Sequence record: LR756501.1
DNA length: 64,000 nt
Reading direction: 5' to 3' (one strand)
This document shows, piece after piece, positions 1-36,030 of this stretch. The notes under the pieces were generated by a model. The model saw only the letters and a program-made list of their open reading frames with translations, was not told where the DNA came from and made no database searches. Position numbers and translations under genes: made by a program. Numbering within the stretch: position 1 is the first letter of the stretch; each line of letters starts with the position of its first letter.

Positions 1-1
1 G

Positions 2-418
2 ATTCGACGCCATAACTGTTTGATCTACAGGGTCCCAATTTACAATACCAACTTTCTTTTCGATGAAACCAGCTTTCCAAGCGTCTATGAAAAATCTCTG
101 CTCATGTTTCCAATAATCAACTTCACAAGTTGAAATTTCTTTATCCCAATCGAAAGACATATTCATTCTTTTCATTTGGTCTCGCATGTTATCAATATTG
201 GCATCAGTCCATTCCATAGGATGAATGTTATTTTTGATAGCTGCGTTTTCTGCTGGCATACCAAAGGAATCCCAACCGATAGGGTGGCAAACTTCGTAAC
301 CTTTATTTCTCCAGTACCTGGCTATTGCGTCAGATATTGTATAGTTTCTCATATGACCCATGTGGATATTACCGGATGGGTAGGGTATCATAGGAACAAC
401 AAACATTTTTTTCTTCAT
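2..418 (-). CDS. leuS: Leucyl-tRNA synthetase, N-terminal part (runs off window start)
   Basis: Not in ORF track. My translation: MKKKMFVVPMIPYPSGNIHMGHMRNYTISDAIARYWRNKGYEVCHPIGWDSFGMPAENAAIK..., with the HMGH (HIGH) motif and GWDxFGxPAENAA typical of bacterial LeuRS. ATG overlaps the TGA of the upstream gene. Confidence 0.95.
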   Translation of the reverse strand, partial: MKKKMFVVPMIPYPSGNIHMGHMRNYTISDAIARYWRNKGYEVCHPIGWDSFGMPAENAAIKNNIHPMEWTDANIDNMRDQMKRMNMSFDWDKEISTCEVDYWKHEQRFFIDAWKAGFIEKKVGIVNWDPVDQTVMASN

Positions 419-1185
419 TTCTTTTCCTTTCTCGTGAAATGATCTATATTTATATTATATTTTTTTATAGAATAATAAACGTAATGTTTCACTTTACTAT
501 TATAATTAACATTCAAATTATCAGCTATATCTCGATATGATTTTGATTTTTTAACAACAGTTTCTAAAAATTCTTTATCTAAACTTTTATCAAAATTTCC
601 ATAATTTCTTTTATTTACATAATCTTTCCAGTTTTCATTTTCAAGAATATCCAATTTGTCTTCGTCATATCTAAAATAACAACTTCCCGCACTACCTTTT
701 AAATCACAACTAAATTTTATTTGTTGTCTAAATATTCCAGTTTCTCTCTCGGCTCCTCTTATGCTAATGAATTTTTTTATTGGATTTAAATTTAAATCAT
801 ACATTATTATTGATCTTTTTCTGGTGTTAGATATTTTCATCAATTTTTTACTCTCTTCGCTGTGTTTTTTACCCAACCAAGATACTCCGTCACCACCATC
901 AGTTTGATTTTTTAACTTAAACCCCCAAACTTTAAATTGGCATATCCAATATTTTTCTAAGCTATTGATATTATTATCATCACCTATATCCAATATTTCT
1001 ATAATTGGAACCAATTTTTTATTTTTTAAATATTTTAACCATTTATTCTTTTTTGTCCAAGGTTCCAATTGAATATAATAATCAGAATAATGTCTTTTAA
1101 CTCTTTTTTCAATATTGTTAGTTTTCCCAATATATTTTATATCACCGTCTTCTGGATCTGTTAAAGTGTAAATGAATTGTTCCAT
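415..1185 (-). CDS. GIY-YIG homing endonuclease with NUMOD3-like DNA-binding segment
   Basis: N-terminal FIYTLTDP...KYIGKT; LE+YWI; NQTDGGDG; GKKHSEESK (NUMOD3-like). Confidence 0.9.
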   Translation of the reverse strand: MEQFIYTLTDPEDGDIKYIGKTNNIEKRVKRHYSDYYIQLEPWTKKNKWLKYLKNKKLVPIIEILDIGDDNNINSLEKYWICQFKVWGFKLKNQTDGGDGVSWLGKKHSEESKKLMKISNTRKRSIIMYDLNLNPIKKFISIRGAERETGIFRQQIKFSCDLKGSAGSCYFRYDEDKLDILENENWKDYVNKRNYGNFDKSLDKEFLETVVKKSKSYRDIADNLNVNYNSKVKHYVYYSIKKYNINIDHFTRKEKK

Positions 1186-1240
1186 AATAAGTTTTTATCT
1201 TTATATATAAAAATTATATGGTCCCATTGTTTCATATTTG

Positions 1241-1314
1241 TGGCCCTACCCAGACTCGAACTGGGACATCAAGTTTCTAAGACTTGCGCGACTACGCTAT
1301 TACGCCATAGAGCC
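1241..1314 (-). tRNA. tRNA-Leu(UAG) with short (4-nt) variable loop
   Basis: GGCTCTA/TAGGGCC acceptor, A73; CAAGT-CTTAGAA-ACTTG anticodon arm; variable ATGT; CCCAG-TTCGAGT-CTGGG T-arm; D-loop lacks GG. Confidence 0.75.
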
Positions 1315-1319
1315 ATTTG

Positions 1320-1392
1320 TAACCCTGCACGGAGTCGAACCGAGATATTCTGGTTTTAAGCCAGACGCCACTACCAATTAGGCTACAGAGTC
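1320..1392 (-). tRNA. tRNA-Leu(UAA) with short (4-nt) variable loop
   Basis: GACTCTG/CAGGGTT acceptor, A73; 3-bp GCC/GGC D-stem; TCTGG-CTTAAAA-CCAGA; variable ATAT; TTCGACT T-loop. Confidence 0.8.
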
Positions 1393-1402
1393 ATTTTTAT
1401 TG

Positions 1403-1486
1403 TACCGAGGATGGGAGTCGAACCCACACGTCCGTAAGGACACTGGTTTTTGAGACCAGCGCGTCTACCAGTTCCGCCACCTCGGC
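1403..1486 (-). tRNA. tRNA-Leu(CAA)
   Basis: Canonical class II cloverleaf; CTGGT-CTCAAAA-ACCAG; long variable arm. Confidence 0.95.
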
Positions 1487-1489
1487 ATG

Positions 1490-1610
1490 TGATGAAGTAA
1501 TAGGATTCGAACCTATATGACTGATTTCTCAGCGGTTAGCCCTTGTACTTCGGTCTTTCCCATTTTCACCCTAAACGGGTGATACGTTTCCATTTTAGTC
1601 CTACTTCATC
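1490..1610 (-). ncRNA. 121-nt tRNA-like RNA, identity unclear
   Basis: Perfect 9-bp terminal helix GATGAAGTA/TACTTCATC followed by A-CA; T-arm ATAGG-TTCGAAT-CCTAT; internal hairpins TCACCC/GGGTGA and CTGA-GAAA-TCAG; no canonical anticodon loop. Confidence 0.6.
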
Positions 1611-1612
1611 TG

Positions 1613-1696
1613 TGCGGTTAAGGGGACTCGAACCCCTACGTCCTTGCGGACACCAGCCCCTCAAGCTGGCGCGTCTACCAATTCCGCCATAACCGC
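1613..1696 (-). tRNA. tRNA-Leu(GAG)
   Basis: Canonical class II; CCAGC-TTGAGGG-GCTGG. Confidence 0.95.
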
Positions 1697-1702
1697 GTTG
1701 TG

Positions 1703-1784
1703 TGCCCTTGACAGGACTCGAACCTGCACATCCGAAGACACTAGATCCTAAGTCTAGCGCGTCTACCAATTCCGCCACAAGGGC
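1703..1784 (-). tRNA. tRNA-Leu(UAG)
   Basis: Canonical class II; CTAGA-CTTAGGA-TCTAG. Confidence 0.95.
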
Positions 1785-1803
1785 ATAAACAGATTGCCTT
1801 TTT

Positions 1804-1888
1804 AAAATAAGGTTGGATTCGAACCAACATTCTCCATCTTTGCTTTTTCTCTGCGTCCAATGGTGTGTTACCCTTACACTACTCTCCC
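1804..1888 (-). pseudogene. Degenerate tRNA-like element
   Basis: D-arm GTAGTGTAAGGGTAACAC and T-arm GTTGG-TTCGAAT-CCAAC retained; acceptor poorly paired; anticodon arm expanded. Confidence 0.5.
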
Positions 1889-1942
1889 AATTTTTGGCGG
1901 GAGCCGTTTTGTTTGCTGTAAGCAATCTTTATTATTTCAAAA

Positions 1943-1954
1943 TGTTAAAGAACA
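1943..1954 (-). promoter_or_regulatory. boxA-like antitermination element
   Basis: TGTTCTTTAACA versus the rrn boxA consensus TGCTCTTTAACA; lies just after the leader terminator and before the tRNAs. Confidence 0.65.
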
Positions 1955-1960
1955 TAAAAA

Positions 1961-1989
1961 CAAAAAACCCAATCATTGCTGATTGGGTC
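1961..1989 (-). terminator. Attenuator terminator of the Leu tRNA/LeuRS operon
   Basis: ACCCAATCA-GCAA-TGATTGGGT followed by TTTTTG. Confidence 0.85.
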
Positions 1990-2028
1990 TCTGTGACTTC
2001 ATTCGAGAAGAATTCATCCACACATACT

Positions 2029-2097
2029 TCACCCAATCAACTTTATACCCAAGAGGCATAAACTGTTCAGAAGGTTAATATGTAGAATGTTATTCAT
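2029..2097 (-). CDS. Leucine-rich leader peptide (22 aa) MNNILHINLLNSLCLLGIKLIG
   Basis: Leu codons CTA, CTT, CTG, TTA, CTC, TTG, TTG; 3' end contains TGATTGGGT, complementary to the terminator 5' arm. Confidence 0.85.
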   Translation of the reverse strand: MNNILHINLLNSLCLLGIKLIG

Positions 2098-2122
2098 ATA
2101 CTTTTATATTATAAGATTTATA

Positions 2123-2138
2123 CTTTGTTTTATATATT
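2123..2138 (-). promoter_or_regulatory. Putative promoter motif AATATATAAAACAAAG (copy 1)
   Basis: Identical 16-mer at 14474-14489 upstream of the second leader peptide; contains the phage TATATA motif. Confidence 0.65.
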
Positions 2139-2160
2139 TAATCAAAAATGTCTGTTTTTT

Positions 2161-2935
2161 CTATTTCTTTACTTTTATAAGATTATGTTTTTTAGCTAAA
2201 TTAACCCCTTCTTCGAAAGTGAGTACCTTTTCCTTTGTTGGTTTGAAGATGATTGCGTAATCACTACCATCTCTAGCCAAGGAGAAACACAACGGGCTTA
2301 TACCAAAATACAAGTCCATCCACAATTTATTAGCTGTATTTTTATTCATTTTATAATATAAGTTTCCTTTATAACTAATTCTTCATTTTTAGCAATGGAA
2401 TCTGGGTGATAACCACGTTCGTAAACTTCAAAAGATTTCTTTGCTTCGTCTATATTTTCACAATCTACTGTGAAAAATGGATGTTTTCTTACTCTTCCTG
2501 TGTTTAAATTTTTCTTATAAAACAGAAATTTTTTCATAGGTTTGGATTTAGAATACAAAGATACGAAAGTTTTCTAATTTAAAAAAATTAAATCATTTCT
2601 TTTTGAATTTATCACAACTATCAGTTTTCTTAACGGATTTGTATAACATTGGATGACCAATGAAACAAACAGTGTTCACGTCGTAAAAAGGTTTACAGTG
2701 AACACAATTTTCACACTTATTTTTTTCCATTATATTCATCATAAAGTTCATCAATAGTCATATGATATACACCTTTCTTTGGGTGTTTAAGATCAAGAGG
2801 TCTCTCCCAGAGTTTTCCACTATGAGAAACACACGTCCAACCATTTTTACCTAACCACTTTGCGAATTTACAAGCTTCCTTTTTCATAAAATTAATATTA
2901 AAGATTTTTATTGATGCGGACTCCCGATTCTCCAC
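2161..2935 (-). CDS. Four small hypothetical proteins (2161-2349, 2346-2558, 2593-2730, 2717-~2887)
   Basis: Tightly overlapping ORFs; 2593-2730 (45 aa, CxxCxxC...C...C) is missing from the ORF track. Confidence 0.6.
2556..2563 (-). promoter_or_regulatory. Bacteroidota-type sigma -7 element (TATCTTTG)
   Basis: Matches TAnnTTTG; similar elements at 4985, 14625, 22776, 36167, 47843, 52881, 58151, 59350 (minus) and 24432 (plus), all in or near intergenic gaps. Confidence 0.7.
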
Positions 2936-3101
2936 CGCTCTTTCTTGTAATTGGCCTCTGTATCATCCAATCGTTATAGGTTTACTACCGCTAAAGACGT
3001 GCTAATTTTTGGATCGTATCTTGTTACACTAGTTTCAATAAAAATCTGTTCACTGATAATTACTAATACAAATATAAGCTTCTTTTCTATATAAAAAAAA
3101 T

Positions 3102-3440
3102 TTACATCAATAATTCTGGATCTATTCCATTATCCATCAACTGCCTTTGATAATTTCCAAAAGGAACTTTGGCAATCTGTTTATCCCTAAACCCCTTCAT
3201 CTGTAAATAACCGGGTTTACCACCGTATTCTATATCATTATCAACCAAGAAATTATGAACATCAGCGTTAGTATTAAATCCACCTTCTTCGTGTTTTTTA
3301 CCGTCTTTAGTGTATGTTAATCCCCAACTCTTACCTTTACCAATGAATTCAACTTGAATGAATTTTGCTGTTTTTAGATCTTCTGCTAATTCTTTATGAG
3401 TCATTTCTTCGTTTAAGAAGGTATCAAATTTAATGTTCAT
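3102..3440 (-). CDS. Hypothetical protein with capsid-targeting-like N-terminus
   Basis: MNIKFDTFLNEE; upstream TATATA motif. Confidence 0.55.
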   Translation of the reverse strand: MNIKFDTFLNEEMTHKELAEDLKTAKFIQVEFIGKGKSWGLTYTKDGKKHEEGGFNTNADVHNFLVDNDIEYGGKPGYLQMKGFRDKQIAKVPFGNYQRQLMDNGIDPELLM

Positions 3441-3478
3441 AATTTATTGTAAATCATTTTTACTTATATATAAATCTT

Positions 3479-3841
3479 TTAATCCCAATTTTCTTCACCA
3501 TAAGGGTCCATCGGTGTAATCTTAATAATACCCAACTTTATTTTCCTCATTCTTTCTTCTAAATCCCTCTTCCTCTTTTCTTTTCTTATTTCTCTTTCCC
3601 TTAAACTCTCTTTAATATTATCAATAAGTGTAAATTCAAAACCATTGTCCTCCCACCAATCCTTAATAATAGAAGCTGCTATTATAACTAAACTTATAAT
3701 AGCAACAAGAGGAATTAAATGAATTACCATGCCTCTATTGTTTAGTTCAAAATCATTACTATTATGAGAAATGATAAAGACTATTACAATAGGTACAATA
3801 TAAAGAGCAAATATTAATCCGAAAAATAATAATGTCGTCAC
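3479..3841 (-). CDS. Membrane protein with C-terminal DPYGEENWD motif
   Basis: Two hydrophobic segments; ends [11 protein letters not shown]. Confidence 0.7.
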   Translation of the reverse strand: MTTLLFFGLIFALYIVPIVIVFIISHNSNDFELNNRGMVIHLIPLVAIISLVIIAASIIKDWWEDNGFEFTLIDNIKESLREREIRKEKRKRDLEERMRKIKLGIIKITPMDPYGEENWD

Positions 3842-4383
3842 GCCTCGTGTAATTTTTTAATTTCGTCCCTAATCCTAGCAGCCTCCATATAATCCTCAGT
3901 ATCAATTGCTTGCTTCAACTGGTCCTGTAAAGATGTTGGTTGTGGTTTTTCTTCGTTTTTAACAAATGGAATAGAATTGAGTACATTTTCGTCACCTATC
4001 ATTTGTTGTTCGTTCACCATTTTCTGTGTAGTAATGAGTCTTACTGTTTCCTTAACAGAATCAGATACGTTAATCACCCTATCTGATAGATAGAAATATC
4101 CAGCGGATAACGCTAGGCTCACTCTAACTCTTTTCAATTCCACTTCTAATCTTTCTTCGAAAGGAAGTTTAAAGAGTGTTTCGTAATATTCAGGTGTATT
4201 TTCAGATTTCTTTCTGAAATAGGAAAAAGAATACGCCCAATGAAGTTTCTCTATCGGTGTATCTTTATACTTACTATTACTATTTCTTAGTACGTTAATG
4301 AGTTCTTGTGACTCTTTTTCGTATTCTTTACATACTAGATCGTATGTTACAAACATCGTTATCATAACGTTATGGTTTTTCAA
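3838..4383 (-). CDS. Hypothetical protein with C-terminal UVR (UvrB/C) motif
   Basis: [27 protein letters not shown]. Confidence 0.8.
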
Positions 4384-35739: not shown

Positions 35740-35842
35740 GGTAGGTTTCCCAATAACTGGTTTCCCTAGATTTTAAAGAACAACAGGACTTTCACCTGCT
35801 ATATCTAACCATTTTACTGGTGATTTTATTTGTATTCTTTTG

Positions 35843-35911
35843 TAGCCCGTAAGAGATTCGAACTCTTGTTACTGGAGTAATCCAGGGTACTTTCCGCTAT
35901 ACGAACGGGCC
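35843..35911 (-). ncRNA. Anticodon-less tRNA-Glu-like RNA
   Basis: GGCCCGT/ACGGGCT; CTGGA-TTAC-TCCAG (4-nt loop). Confidence 0.8.
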
Positions 35912-35959: not shown

Positions 35960-35961
35960 AG

Positions 35962-36030
35962 TAGCCCGTAAGAGATTCGAACTCCTGTCACTGGAATAAT
36001 CCAGTGTCCTTTCCGCTAGACTAACGGGCC
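35962..36030 (-). ncRNA. Anticodon-less tRNA-Glu-like RNA
   Basis: GGCCCGT/ACGGGCT; CTGGA-TTAT-TCCAG (4-nt loop). Confidence 0.8.

What the first reader, a model, noticed from the sequence alone, without database searches (positions are those of the whole stretch)
1943..2138. Leucine attenuator using all six Leu codons upstream of an all-Leu tRNA cluster and LeuRS
Seen in sequence: a 22-aa ORF (2097-2029, MNNILHINLLNSLCLLGIKLIG) has seven Leu codons covering every synonymous codon (CTA, CTT, CTG, TTA, CTC, TTG, TTG). Its last codons contain TGATTGGGT (2031-2039), identical to the 3' arm of the terminator and so able to sequester its 5' arm ACCCAATCA (1980-1988). Downstream lie only Leu-anticodon tRNAs (UAG x2, GAG, CAA, UAA), whose anticodons cover all six codons, then LeuRS. 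Inference: a ribosome stalled at any Leu codon frees the antiterminator and induces the phage Leu module, making this an isoacceptor-complete sensor.
Basis: partly seen in the sequence, partly recalled or inferred. Interest (0 to 1): 0.92.

Follow-up and report, generated by a model that had tools for sequence, protein, structure and literature searches.

The report
Leucine attenuator gating phage tRNA-Leu operon
A giant bacteriophage appears to switch on its own leucine tRNAs and leucyl-tRNA synthetase only when ribosomes stall at leucine codons in a tiny upstream gene, and the same trick, with other amino acids, seems to gate the other tRNA clusters of this phage and its relatives.

Summary
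The 22-codon ORF (2097-2029, minus strand) has seven Leu codons of all six kinds. A strong intrinsic terminator follows. TGATTGGGT occurs both in the ORF's last codons and in the terminator's 3' arm.

The window is part of the 735-kb uncultured phage LR756501.1. Relatives keep the design:
- A Leu-rich mini-ORF stops 14-36 nt before a terminator.
- A segment around the stop codon is complementary to the terminator's 5' arm, and it changes in step with both arms (GATTGGG to GACTGGG).
- This lies upstream of tRNA-Leu genes and/or a compact LeuRS.

The design is general. In 21 terminator-to-tRNA units from these phages, the leader's amino acids mirror the tRNA genes behind it (Gln run before tRNA-Gln; K/H/F/W before His, Trp, Phe, Lys; 0 of 20,000 permutations match). 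Four such units lie in this genome, one more of them in this window (14431-14285).

I conclude it is a classical leader-peptide transcription attenuator used in a new place: phage tRNA operons. All evidence is computational.

The "isoacceptor-complete" claim is only partly supported. All six codons are unlikely by chance here (P about 0.004) and in one relative (0.008). A third lineage has five, and codon-to-anticodon matching across units is not above expectation. I found no prior report.

The parts
2143..2150 (-). CATTTTTG, a near match to the Bacteroidetes sigma-A -7 box TAnnTTTG; candidate promoter of the leader transcript
   Evidence: The sequence is at these coordinates. The 97%-LeuRS relative L086 has a perfect TATTTTTG at the aligned position. 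Many other units carry TAnnTTTG 50-60 nt before the leader ATG. The consensus is taken from PMC9723704. Promoter function is inferred, not shown.
2123..2139 (-). Conserved 17-mer AAATATATAAAACAAAG in the presumed 5' untranslated region
   Evidence: The identical 17-mer occurs only twice in the window, each time just upstream of a leader ORF (2139-2123 and 14490-14474). It is conserved in L086 and nearly so in L002.
2029..2097 (-). Leader ORF, 22 codons plus TGA: MNNILHINLLNSLCLLGIKLIG. Leu is at codons 5, 9, 10, 13, 15, 16 (six different codons) and 20.
   Evidence: It is identical in L086. Homologous Leu-rich leaders occur in L002, L003 and at least 10 further phage contigs.
2065..2089 (-). 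Region 1: 5' strand of the anti-antiterminator hairpin, inside the leader ORF (codons 3-11)
   Evidence: In the minimum-free-energy fold of the free RNA it pairs with 2041-2015. The same 1:2 plus 3:4 fold is found in L002 and L003.
2021..2042 (-). Region 2: antiterminator strand AGTTGATTGGGTGAAGTATGTG, spanning codons 19-22, the stop codon and 8 nt beyond. Its core is TGATTGGGT at 2039-2031.
   Evidence: The duplex with region 3 has an energy of -18.8 kcal/mol, against -12.2 +/- 2.5 for shuffles. It is the minimum-free-energy partner of region 3 in the transcript cut before the 3' arm, as long as the A site is at codon 16 or earlier. It co-varies with both terminator arms in L003.
1980..1994 (-). 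Region 3: terminator 5' arm ACAGAGACCCAATCA
1956..1975 (-). Region 4: terminator 3' arm TGATTGGGT, running into the T-tract TTTTTTGTTTTT (1967-1956). The loop GCAA is at 1979-1976.
1804..1888 (-). tRNA-like element between the terminator and the first canonical tRNA. It has D- and T-arm-like parts and a 5-bp stem closing a 20-nt loop where the anticodon loop should be.
   Evidence: It scores 38.5 bits against the Rfam tRNA model, but ARAGORN does not call it. It is conserved in L002, where the stem changes compensatorily from CCATT/GATGG to CCAGG/CCTGG. Its function is unknown.
1240..1784 (-). Regulated cargo 1: five tRNA genes with Leu anticodons. These are UAG (1784-1702), GAG (1696-1612), CAA (1486-1402), UAA (1392-1319) and UAG (1314-1240). 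A 122-nt tRNA-like insert lies at 1611-1490.
   Evidence: No terminator is called between 1963 and the window start on this strand, apart from a tRNA T-arm.
415..1185 (-). GIY-YIG/NUMOD homing-endonuclease gene inserted between the tRNAs and LeuRS. It is absent at this place in L002.
   Evidence: Pfam hits GIY-YIG, NUMOD1 and NUMOD3. In L002 the LeuRS gene starts 10 nt after the last tRNA.
1..417 (-). Regulated cargo 2: 5' part of the compact leucyl-tRNA synthetase gene (508 aa in the full record)
14275..14490 (-). Paralogous second unit in the same window. It has the same 17-mer (14490-14474) and the leader MLQTSKHSKHFSSSSKWFTTFGVETDLLCVS (14431-14336). The antiterminator strand TTCGGGGTT (14371-14363) matches the terminator arm AACCCCGAA (14313-14305), and the terminator spans 14315-14285. 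tRNA genes for Trp, His, His, Phe, Lys and Ser follow at 14259-13543.

Best explanation
This is a ribosome-mediated (leader-peptide) transcription attenuator at the head of a phage operon. The operon holds five Leu-anticodon tRNA genes and a compact leucyl-tRNA synthetase.

Proposed mechanism (inferred):
1. Transcription starts about 45 nt upstream of the leader ATG.
2. A ribosome translates the 22-codon leader.
3. If Leu-tRNA(Leu) is plentiful, the ribosome runs to the stop codon. There it covers region 2 (2042-2021), so region 3 pairs with region 4, the terminator forms, and transcription ends at the T-tract (about 1956).
4. If the ribosome stalls at one of the six Leu codons in codons 5-16, region 1 is held by the ribosome and region 2 is free. 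Region 2 then pairs with the terminator's 5' arm before the 3' arm is made. RNA polymerase reads through into the tRNA-Leu genes and LeuRS.
5. The new tRNA and synthetase relieve the stall and close a negative-feedback loop.
6. With no translation at all, the 1:2 hairpin forms and the terminator forms.

What is shown and what is not:
- Shown in silico: the elements exist, they are conserved and co-vary, and their geometry fits.
- Inferred: the promoter, translation of the leader, and the actual response to charged tRNA-Leu.

The same architecture, with the leader's amino acids changed to match the tRNA genes behind it, heads other tRNA modules of this phage and related huge phages.
For: **1. 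Anatomy.** The ORF, the terminator and the 9-nt identity between the ORF's end and the 3' arm are all present. The region is strongly structured (z = -5.4), and the free-RNA fold is 1:2 plus 3:4.

**2. Geometry.** In the transcript cut before the 3' arm, the 2:3 antiterminator is the minimum-free-energy fold while the A site is at codon 16 or earlier. It is lost from codon 18. The same boundary falls just after the last regulatory codon in L002, L003 and the second window unit.

**3. Conservation near LeuRS.**
- L086 has an identical leader.
- L002 has MNNILHNNLLNLLLLLGIIGLGVLC and L003 has MKNNINTLVLLLNNLLLQSNRTGRVIQMC. Each precedes a terminator and then 5-7 Leu tRNAs and LeuRS.
- Of 55 distinct phage LeuRS loci, 10 have a Leu-dense mini-ORF plus terminator within 1.5 kb upstream on the sense strand. 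The antisense control gives 2, and every other amino acid gives 2 or fewer.

**4. Covariation.**
- Regions 2, 3 and 4 change together between the window and L003 (GATTGGG / CCAATC to GACTGGG / CCAGTC).
- L002 pairs an extra G in region 2 with a C that lies in its terminator loop.
- Across 15 units with unrelated terminator sequences, the upstream strand matches the 5' arm better than shuffles in 12 (Fisher combined P = 1.6e-11). It lies at or shortly before the stop codon, from 54 nt before its end to 13 nt past it.

**5. Spacing.** The distance from stop codon to stem is 14-36 nt in these units.

**6. Cargo matching.**
- In 21 terminator-to-tRNA units, the leader composition matches the amino acids of the downstream tRNAs. 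The summed score is 55.2 against 13.3 +/- 4.6 for permuted pairings, and 0 of 20,000 permutations reach it.
- The enrichment is frame-specific: 44% in frame 0 against 18.5% and 15.6% in the other frames (P = 1e-29).

**7. No room for another promoter.** In most units the first tRNA starts 8-35 nt after the T-tract, so the tRNAs have no space for a promoter of their own.

**8. Paralogues in this genome.** There are four units, for the sets L; Y, N, D, C, I; K, H, S, F, W; and M, Q, I. Three of them share an ...LIG motif at the antiterminator.

**9. Rare codons.** The rare CTC codon is enriched in the Leu leaders. From my own knowledge, the classical leu leader also uses rare codons.

**10. Host compatibility.** The largest Mahaphage genomes are predicted to infect Bacteroidetes (PMC7162821). 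That phylum uses TAnnTTTG promoters, and leader-peptide attenuation has been inferred for it (PMC9723704).
Against: - There is no experiment. The phage is uncultivated, and neither transcription start, leader translation nor termination has been measured.
- At equilibrium, with the whole terminator present, the terminator stays the preferred fold in the window, L003 and the second unit even with a stalled ribosome. The model therefore needs kinetic, co-transcriptional competition. From my own knowledge, the classical trp attenuator works the same way.
- The window has 184 nt between the T-tract and the first canonical tRNA, including a tRNA-like element. A second promoter there cannot be excluded.
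- The homing-endonuclease gene in front of LeuRS has a promoter-like AT-rich motif of its own. LeuRS may therefore be partly independent of the attenuator in this phage.
- Three of 15 antiterminator tests were not significant. One of them, L006, was mis-parsed by my script.
- 45 of 55 LeuRS loci show no such leader within 1.5 kb.
Confidence: 0.85

Rival explanations
1. The hairpin is simply the terminator of the upstream small-gene cluster (ORFs at 2935-2161). The 22-codon ORF and the 9-nt repeat are chance, and the tRNAs are made from a promoter of their own.
For: The terminator lies about 170 nt after the stop of the upstream ORF at 2349-2161. In the window, 184 nt separate the T-tract from the first canonical tRNA. 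Short ORFs are abundant in AT-rich DNA: there are 573 of 12-40 aa in the window.
Against: - Only 1 of 573 short ORFs has all six Leu codons.
- The 9-mer clustering is not expected by chance.
- The ORF, its Leu richness and the matched antiterminator persist, with compensatory change, in relatives whose upstream genes differ.
- In most related units the tRNA starts 8-35 nt after the T-tract, which leaves no room for a promoter.
- A conserved promoter-proximal 17-mer sits between the upstream gene and the leader.
Confidence: 0.03
2. The mini-ORF encodes a functional hydrophobic micro-protein (for example a membrane peptide), and its Leu richness reflects that function rather than regulation.
For: The peptide is hydrophobic (7 Leu, 3 Ile of 22). 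Some related leaders (L022, L033) look like membrane helices.
Against: - The peptide sequences are not conserved beyond their composition.
- Paralogous units have Gln runs, K/H/F/W/S, Y/N/D/C/I or Leu/Ser repeats. Each matches the tRNA genes that follow, which no peptide function predicts.
- The stop codon keeps a fixed distance to the terminator, and the antiterminator strand lies at or just upstream of it.
Confidence: 0.03
3. The switch between antiterminator and terminator is real but is set by an RNA- or protein-binding event, not by a translating ribosome. One option is uncharged tRNA binding, as in a T-box. Another is the phage LeuRS binding its own leader, as in thrS-type autoregulation.
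For: Synthetase genes are commonly controlled by T-boxes or by autoregulation (my own knowledge). tRNA-like elements lie next to the terminator (1888-1804).
Against: - No T-box or other leader family reaches E <= 1 in 1-4000. The only non-tRNA hits are sub-threshold and on the other strand.
- Cognate codons are enriched only in the ATG-defined frame (44% against about 17%).
- Leaders with five cognate amino acids, each matching the mixed tRNA cargo, are hard to explain by one binding site.
- The regulatory codons end exactly where a ribosome would begin to cover the antiterminator.
Confidence: 0.07
4. This is a sub-claim of the first reader. The leader is built to test every tRNA-Leu isoacceptor separately (one codon of each kind), so that loss of any single isoacceptor induces the module.
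For: - The six Leu codons in the productive zone (codons 5-16) are six different codons. The probability is about 0.001 from the usage, or 0.004 for all six among seven.
- L003 also has all six (P = 0.008), and it encodes six different Leu anticodons, one Watson-Crick partner for each codon.
- L002's five kinds still sample all four anticodons encoded downstream.
Against: - L002 lacks CTT (P = 0.25).
- The other eleven Leu leaders, including all those that precede LeuRS alone, use 2-5 kinds, as expected by chance.
- Across 21 units, codon-to-anticodon matching equals expectation: 183 of 228 against 182.7.
- L009a uses mostly TTA, while the Leu tRNAs behind it have anticodon UAG.
- Codon choice is also constrained by the 1:2 hairpin, which the same bases form.
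Confidence: 0.35

Closest known systems
leu operon leader (leuL attenuator) of enterobacteria; Rfam Leu_leader
   Same: A short leader ORF with clustered Leu codons, including rare ones. It is followed by an intrinsic terminator with an alternative antiterminator that is set by ribosome position. Read-through rises when charged tRNA-Leu is scarce (my own knowledge of the classical system).
   Different: - There is no sequence or model similarity: no leader family reaches E <= 1 in 1-4000.
- The cargo here is tRNA-Leu genes plus LeuRS, not leucine biosynthesis.
- The element is in a phage predicted to infect Bacteroidetes.
- The Leu codons are spread over codons 5-16 and use all six synonymous codons, rather than one run dominated by a single codon.
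pheST attenuator of E. coli (pheM leader peptide)
   Same: An aminoacyl-tRNA synthetase gene is controlled by leader-peptide attenuation with codons for its own amino acid (my own knowledge). This is the nearest precedent for the units where a Leu leader and terminator sit 24-118 nt before the phage LeuRS (L008, L009b, L026, L031, L062).
   Different: It is a cellular gene for Phe rather than Leu, and no tRNA genes lie in the regulated transcript.
Multivalent attenuators: the ilvGMEDA leader (Ile/Leu/Val) and the thr operon leader (Thr/Ile)
   Same: One leader peptide mixes codons for several amino acids, so that shortage of any of them gives read-through (my own knowledge). The paralogous phage leaders mix up to five or six amino acids.
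   Different: In the phages the mix mirrors the identities of the tRNA genes downstream, not the end products of a pathway. The same scaffold is re-targeted many times within one genome.
T-box riboswitches of Firmicutes
   Same: They control synthetase genes through a terminator/antiterminator choice that reports tRNA charging (PMC2494555, listed; otherwise my own knowledge).
   Different: A T-box binds uncharged tRNA directly through a specifier codon and the T-box sequence, and needs no translation. Here there is no T-box match, and the signal is a translated frame.
tRNA gene clusters of large phages and giant viruses
   Same: Arrays of phage-encoded tRNAs, sometimes with synthetases, thought to support or redirect translation (PMC7162821).
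   Different: I found no report of leader-peptide attenuators in front of them. The genome paper does not contain the words attenuat-, leader or terminator. Six further full-text searches gave nothing relevant.

Membership tests
Leader-peptide (ribosome-mediated) transcription attenuator | A short translatable ORF enriched in codons for the regulatory amino acid | tested here: met
   7 Leu in 22 codons. It is 1 of 7 among 387 short ORFs of 25 aa or fewer with at least 7 Leu, and the only one of 573 with all six codons. The enrichment is conserved in relatives.
Leader-peptide (ribosome-mediated) transcription attenuator | An intrinsic terminator between the leader and the regulated genes | tested here: met
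   A 13-bp stem with a T-run at 1992-1956. No other terminator is called before the tRNAs or LeuRS.
Leader-peptide (ribosome-mediated) transcription attenuator | A mutually exclusive antiterminator whose upstream strand is covered by a ribosome that reaches the stop codon | tested here: met
   Region 2 (2042-2021) spans the stop codon. The duplex energy is -18.8 kcal/mol (P = 0.03 against shuffles). Fisher combined P is 1.6e-11 over 15 units. Ribosome-mask folding agrees.
Leader-peptide (ribosome-mediated) transcription attenuator | An anti-antiterminator (1:2) pairing that forms when the leader is not translated | tested here: met
   The free-RNA minimum-free-energy fold pairs 2089-2065 with 2041-2015 and keeps the terminator. 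The same holds for L002 and L003. It was not examined in the more distant units.
Leader-peptide (ribosome-mediated) transcription attenuator | The regulatory amino acid corresponds to the function of the regulated genes | tested here: met
   The Leu leader precedes tRNA-Leu x5 plus LeuRS. The general leader-to-tRNA match is not reached by any of 20,000 permutations.
Leader-peptide (ribosome-mediated) transcription attenuator | Conservation with compensatory changes in homologues | tested here: met
   There is a three-way change in regions 2, 3 and 4 between the window and L003, and an extra compensated pair in L002.
Leader-peptide (ribosome-mediated) transcription attenuator | A promoter directly upstream of the leader | tested here: inconclusive
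   No sigma-70-type site is called there. A TAnnTTTG-like box (CATTTTTG, 2150-2143) and a conserved 17-mer are present. Perfect TAnnTTTG boxes occur in L086 and many other units. There are no transcription-start data.
Leader-peptide (ribosome-mediated) transcription attenuator | Read-through responds to the supply of charged cognate tRNA and needs leader translation | not testable with these tools
   This needs reporter or in vitro assays.
Rfam Leu_leader and other curated amino-acid leader RNA families | A match to the family covariance model | tested here: not met
   cmscan of 1-4000 at E <= 1 finds only tRNA hits plus two sub-threshold hits on the plus strand: S15 leader (26.7 bits against 39.5) and snoR71.
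T-box riboswitch | A match to the T-box model (specifier loop plus the T-box antiterminator bulge) | tested here: not met
   There is no T-box hit at E <= 1. The signal is specific to one reading frame.
Bacterial-type leucyl-tRNA synthetase (the regulated protein) | A score above the curated cut-off of the leuS_bact equivalog, with a full domain set | tested here: inconclusive
   It scores 557.9 bits against a cut-off of 548.4, so it is a LeuRS by score. It matches in two stretches, and the second aligns residues 209-504 to model positions 412-748 of 843. The CP1 editing region and the C-terminal domain are therefore absent. Pfam finds only the catalytic core.

The most novel reading that the evidence does not exclude
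Mahaphage-type huge phages may run a demand-driven tRNA supply. Their tRNA arrays are cut into modules, and each module is gated by a leader-peptide attenuator whose codons act as an amino-acid 'barcode' of the tRNA genes (and synthetases or ribosomal proteins) behind it. A module would then be transcribed only when ribosomes in the infected cell actually stall for those amino acids. Such stalling could arise from a mismatch between phage codon usage and the host tRNA pool, from host shut-off, or from host defences that cut or deplete tRNAs. The new tRNAs would switch the module off again. In the all-Leu modules, the leader may go further and poll every Leu codon or isoacceptor.
Probability: 0.55. 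Interest if true: 0.92.

Novelty: new variant of a known kind. Interest (0 to 1): 0.86.

Why it matters
Leader-peptide attenuation is a textbook mechanism. To my knowledge, and in eight full-text searches, it has only been described for amino-acid biosynthesis and a few cellular synthetase genes. I found no description of it for tRNA genes or for phages.

- **A concrete model for the phage translation genes.** If the elements work as inferred, the translation genes of the largest known phages are not just constitutive 'extra parts'. They would form a feedback-controlled system that measures, codon by codon, what the infected cell's ribosomes lack. How and when huge phages use their many tRNAs and synthetases was left open in PMC7162821. 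This gives a testable answer.
- **A new annotation clue.** The leader sequence predicts the amino-acid identity of odd or unrecognised tRNA-like genes downstream.
- **A link to tRNA-targeting host defences.** Those defences would be exactly the signal such a sensor detects.
- **Parts for synthetic biology.** It offers a compact, re-targetable family of amino-acid and tRNA sensors for Bacteroidetes.

Tried and rejected
- **Rfam search of 1-4000 at E <= 1.** No leader, T-box or riboswitch family matched. A sub-threshold S15-leader hit on the plus strand over the terminator was dismissed as spurious.
- **Sigma-70 promoter scan.** Nothing was called at the leader. This is expected for a Bacteroidetes-type host, so the scan was uninformative.
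- **Equilibrium folding with a masked ribosome and the full terminator.** The terminator stays favoured in three of four units. I therefore switched to nascent-transcript folding. The model needs kinetics, and I state this as a weakness.
- **Codon-to-anticodon matching across 21 units.** The match is not above expectation. I rejected isoacceptor-exact design as a general rule.
- **Codon diversity in the other Leu leaders.** It is not above expectation.
- **A possible promoter or processing motif after the terminators (GTTCTTTGAAATATTT) and the motif TTACAGCAAAACAAAACG.** Neither is enriched in the window. They were left as caveats.
- **Metagenome scan for close relatives.** It gave one new locus, L086, whose leader is identical and therefore uninformative for codon conservation, and a duplicate of L003.
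- **Genome scan for cellular relatives of the compact LeuRS.** It returned 10 loci, none from Bacteroidetes. I could not test whether host leuS genes carry similar leaders.
- **My first terminator parser.** It mis-assigned the L006 hairpin. The L002/L006 antiterminator was read by eye instead.
- **Relaxed whole-chunk scan.** Two weak leader/terminator candidates with no tRNAs behind them, at about -9 kcal/mol, were treated as false positives.
Full report
**Where the window comes from.** The window is identical to bases 193,061-257,060 of LR756501.1, the 735-kb 'uncultured phage' genome. That genome is the largest in Al-Shayeb et al. 2020, a member of the Mahaphage clade predicted to infect Bacteroidetes (PMC7162821). 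The window has 31% G+C and no N.

**Checking the observation.**
- The ORF at 2097-2029 reads MNNILHINLLNSLCLLGIKLIG*. Its Leu codons are CTA, CTT, CTG, TTA, CTC, TTG, TTG.
- A terminator with a 13-bp stem at 1992-1963 and a T-run is called by the scan.
- TGATTGGGT lies at 2039-2031 and at 1975-1967. Its complement ACCCAATCA lies at 1988-1980.
- Five tRNAs with Leu anticodons follow at 1784-1240.
- A GIY-YIG homing-endonuclease gene follows at 1185-415.
- A LeuRS gene then starts at 417. In the full record it encodes 508 aa and passes the leuS_bact equivalog cut-off.

The features exceed chance.
- Only 1 of 573 short ATG ORFs in the window has all six Leu codons.
- With the phage's own codon usage, seven Leu codons cover all six kinds with P = 0.004.
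- The 9-mer occurs four times against 0.63 expected, three of them within 73 nt.
- The region folds with z = -5.4.

**Relatives near LeuRS.** A protein-guided scan of viral contigs found two close relatives: L002 (LeuRS 86% identical) and L003 (81%). A metagenome scan added L086 (97%).
- L086 has the identical leader.
- L002 has MNNILHNNLLNLLLLLGIIGLGVLC. This is 10 Leu of five codon kinds, before AACCCAATC-cttaaaa-GATTGGGTT. Five Leu tRNAs follow, and LeuRS starts 10 nt after the last one.
- L003 has MKNNINTLVLLLNNLLLQSNRTGRVIQMC. This is 7 Leu of all six kinds, before ACCCCCAGTC-gaaa-GACTGGGGGT. Seven Leu tRNAs with six different anticodons follow, then LeuRS.
- In the alignment, the strand inside the leader changes together with both terminator arms: TGATTGGGT becomes GGACTGGGA while CCAATC/GATTGG becomes CCAGTC/GACTGG. 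In L002 an extra G in the leader strand pairs with a C that lies in the terminator loop.

**Wider survey.** A profile scan gave 80 phage loci with a compact LeuRS, mostly from contigs of 100-700 kb.
- Of 55 distinct loci, 10 have a Leu-dense mini-ORF followed by a terminator within 1.5 kb upstream on the sense strand. The antisense strand gives 2, and no other amino acid gives more than 2.
- Examples are MKQNAKSLLLLLL (L031), MITTMNTNLLLLADS (L026), MKQIFVNTLLLLSLF (L062), MKTKNTLLLLLKE (L009) and MINNNVNILLLPLT (L005 = LR745206.1). Each lies 24-174 nt before LeuRS.
- The terminator sequences are unrelated between lineages, yet each has its own matching upstream strand. In 12 of 15 units the duplex beats dinucleotide shuffles (Fisher combined P = 1.6e-11). 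The strand lies at or shortly before the stop codon, from 54 nt before its end to 13 nt past it. The distance from stop codon to stem is 14-36 nt.

**Geometry.** I folded the nascent transcript cut just before the 3' arm and masked the bases a ribosome would cover.
- In the window, the antiterminator is the preferred fold as long as the A site is at codon 16 or earlier. It is gone from codon 18.
- The six Leu codons in that productive zone are the six different synonymous codons. The seventh Leu (codon 20) is part of the antiterminator itself.
- The same boundary falls right after the last regulatory codon in L002, L003 and the second window unit.
- The free full-length RNA folds into a 1:2 hairpin (2089-2065 with 2041-2015) plus the terminator. 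This is the classical four-region layout.
- With the complete terminator present, equilibrium folding still favours the terminator in three of four units. The switch must therefore be kinetic. From my own knowledge, the same is true for trp.

**The generalisation.** Scanning the whole window for terminators preceded by short ORFs gave a second unit.
- It carries the identical 17-mer AAATATATAAAACAAAG, found only at 2139-2123 and 14490-14474.
- Its leader is MLQTSKHSKHFSSSSKWFTTFGVETDLLCVS (14431-14336).
- Inside the ORF lies TTCGGGGTT, complementary to the terminator arm AACCCCGAA.
- tRNA genes for Trp, His, His, Phe, Lys and Ser follow.

Scanning all fetched loci gave 21 terminator-to-tRNA units with a leader. 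The leaders mirror the tRNAs that follow:

| Leader | Locus | tRNA genes downstream |
|---|---|---|
| MTTTQQIQQQQINQTD | L005 | Gln x3 |
| MNNLVQQVQQQQINLMIDWTRIG | L067 | Gln x4 |
| MKHFSSHKHSFKFWF... | L020, L028, L061 | His, Trp, Phe, Lys |
| MKTTLSLSLSLSLSLSGWTNRAM | L025 | Leu, Ser x3, Leu, Leu, then LeuRS |
| MKTLASLLVILLCSLVVNRVGYAC | L022 | Cys, Val, Leu x4, Val, Leu, then LeuRS |
| MKNLNLNINLNNLNTCVMNITV... | L030 | Asn, Leu, Ile, Thr, Val, Met, Cys |

- The match between leader composition and downstream tRNA identities scores 55.2 against 13.3 +/- 4.6 for permuted pairings. None of 20,000 permutations reaches it. Some units are related by descent, but about twelve different amino-acid classes are represented.
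- Cognate codons make up 44% of the leader frame, against 18.5% and 15.6% in the other two frames (P = 1e-29). This argues for translation and against an RNA-only sensor.
- In most units the first tRNA starts 8-35 nt after the T-tract, so the tRNAs can only be reached by read-through.
- Many units have a Bacteroidetes -7 box (TAnnTTTG) 50-60 nt before the ATG, and a conserved AATATATA about 10 nt before it (consensus from PMC9723704).
- Some leaders sit directly after another tRNA, so they partition long arrays into separately gated modules.

**Four paralogues in this genome.** Within record positions 136-307 kb of LR756501.1 there are at least four units.
- The Leu unit, which is the finding.
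- MKNMVRKYNDYCINDKLKMLIG, before an L7/L12 gene and tRNAs for Ile, Cys, Ile, Asp, Asn x3, Ile, Tyr and Asp.
- The K/H/S/F/W unit in the window.
- MNFRIINMIQEQMQQIQNLIGGTISY, before tRNAs for Met, Gln x3, Met x3 and Ile.

Three of them share ...LIG at the antiterminator (two also share CCAATCA-type terminator arms). This indicates one scaffold re-targeted by changing the regulatory codons.

**The isoacceptor claim.**
- For: all six codons are improbable in the window (0.004) and in L003 (0.008). L003 encodes exactly six Leu anticodons. L002's five kinds still touch all four anticodons encoded downstream.
- Against: L002 is not significant (0.25), and eleven other Leu leaders show ordinary diversity. 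Leader codons are decodable by the downstream anticodons no more often than codon usage predicts, 183 of 228 against 182.7.
- Codon choice is nevertheless selected: rare CTC occurs 14 times against 4.0 expected, and CTT 6 times against 19. The same bases also build the 1:2 hairpin, which constrains them.
- I rate isoacceptor polling as possible (about 0.35) for the all-Leu modules, and not a general rule.

**Comparison with known systems.**
- In mechanism this is a leader-peptide attenuator like leuL, pheM-pheST and the multivalent ilv and thr leaders (my own knowledge).
- It is not a member of any curated Rfam leader family or of the T-box family.
- What is new is the cargo and the setting. 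The cargo is tRNA genes, a synthetase and a ribosomal protein. The setting is huge phages. Also new is the systematic re-targeting of one scaffold to match each tRNA module.
- The genome paper does not mention attenuators, leaders or terminators. Six other full-text searches combining phage or jumbo-phage terms, or tRNA-operon/cluster terms, with leader peptide or attenuation found nothing relevant. A search on Bacteroidetes found only hints of leader-peptide attenuation at biosynthetic operons. Absence from this library is not proof of absence from the literature.

**Caveats.**
- Everything is computational.
- The promoter and translation of the leader are inferred.
- The window has an unusually long spacer of 184 nt, holding a tRNA-like element, between terminator and first tRNA.
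- The homing-endonuclease gene in front of LeuRS may bring its own promoter.
- Most LeuRS loci (45 of 55) show no leader within 1.5 kb.

**Verdict.** The attenuator reading is strongly supported and turns out to be one case of a broader, apparently undescribed design. The isoacceptor-complete refinement is only partly supported.

Noticed in passing
window 14275-14490 (minus strand), cargo 14259-13543: A second attenuator unit with the same 17-mer and the leader MLQTSKHSKHFSSSSKWFTTFGVETDLLCVS. The antiterminator strand TTCGGGGTT matches the terminator arm AACCCCGAA. tRNA genes for Trp, His, His, Phe, Lys and Ser follow. Further downstream on the same strand lie another tRNA-Lys, a TrpRS-like gene, tRNA-Trp and two tRNA-Lys(CUU).
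   Followed up: yes
L001 2524-2350 (record about 188,505, minus strand) and L098 (record about 174,214, minus strand): Two more paralogous units lie in the same genome but outside the window. MKNMVRKYNDYCINDKLKMLIG precedes an L7/L12 gene and tRNAs for Ile, Cys, Asp, Asn and Tyr. MNFRIINMIQEQMQQIQNLIGGTISY precedes tRNAs for Met, Gln and Ile.
   Followed up: partly
window 1319-1392 and 1240-1314 (minus strand); also L002 7679-7990 and L003 4031-4103, 4199-4273, 5282-5355: Several tRNAs with Leu anticodons (UAA, UAG, CAA) are only 73-75 nt long and have no long variable arm. They sit next to normal 83-87-nt tRNA-Leu genes. From my own knowledge, bacterial tRNA-Leu normally has the long arm. Which enzyme charges the short ones is open; the compact phage LeuRS is one candidate.
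   Followed up: no
window 1-417 (minus strand), full gene at L001 5953-7479: The phage LeuRS is a 508-aa 'mini' enzyme. It passes the leuS_bact cut-off but lacks the model region for the CP1 editing domain (about positions 225-412) and the C-terminal domain (748-843). About 60 phage contigs carry such compact forms of 400-520 aa. No cellular genome in the species-representative scan carried one; the closest cellular hits were full-length LeuRS genes.
   Followed up: partly
window 1804-1888 with flanks 1925-1796 (minus strand); L002 7444-7578: A tRNA-like element lies between the terminator and the first tRNA (Rfam tRNA 38.5 bits; not called by ARAGORN). It has a 5-bp stem closing a 20-22-nt loop in place of the anticodon loop, and the stem changes compensatorily between the window and L002. 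The flanks AGATTGC and GCAATCT are complementary. Its function is unknown.
   Followed up: partly
window 1490-1611 (minus strand): A 122-nt insert lies between tRNA-Leu(GAG) and tRNA-Leu(CAA). It has a 9-bp acceptor-like stem and a T-arm-like hairpin, but about 75 nt of other structure in between (fold z = -3.6). There is no Rfam match. The corresponding gap is present in L086 but absent from L002.
   Followed up: partly
window 415-1185 (minus strand); L003 4442-5206; window about 9950-10815 and 12446-13217 (minus strand): Homing-endonuclease-type genes interrupt the tRNA/synthetase operons. In the window it is a GIY-YIG/NUMOD gene. In L003 it is a 254-aa cysteine-rich ORF, which I did not search against any family library. 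Several of these ORFs are preceded by a shared AT-rich motif (TTTTATATATAAGATAAAAA-like) that may be a promoter.
   Followed up: no
window 11183-11273, 35842-35911, 35961-36030, 14040-14150, 12340-12450 (minus strand): ARAGORN calls tRNAs with a 4-base anticodon (ttac) and with 2-base 'anticodons' (ta). Several more tRNA-like stretches with large inserts are not called at all. The tRNA arrays hold many non-canonical members.
   Followed up: no
window 11374-12087 (minus strand): A short TrpRS-like protein of 237 aa. It scores 120.6 bits against the trpS equivalog, below the cut-off of 176.75, and covers model positions 7-218 of 328. It lies inside the operon headed by the leader that contains Trp.
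   Followed up: partly
14 Leu leaders in the window, L002, L003, L005, L008, L009, L021, L022, L025, L026, L031, L049 and L062: The rare Leu codon CTC is over-used (14 against 4.0 expected) and the common CTT is avoided (6 against 19). Both are read by the same GAG-type tRNA.
   Followed up: partly
L009 4850-5889: Two attenuators lie in tandem. A Leu/Arg leader precedes tRNAs Leu, Arg, Leu, Arg, Arg. A pure Leu leader (MKTKNTLLLLLKE) then lies 113 nt before LeuRS.
   Followed up: partly
window 2570-2550 and 14625-14605 (minus strand); 36180-36160: Perfect Bacteroidetes-type -7 boxes (TATCTTTG, TATTTTTG) precede protein genes and one tRNA cluster. This is consistent with the predicted Bacteroidetes host.
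   Followed up: no
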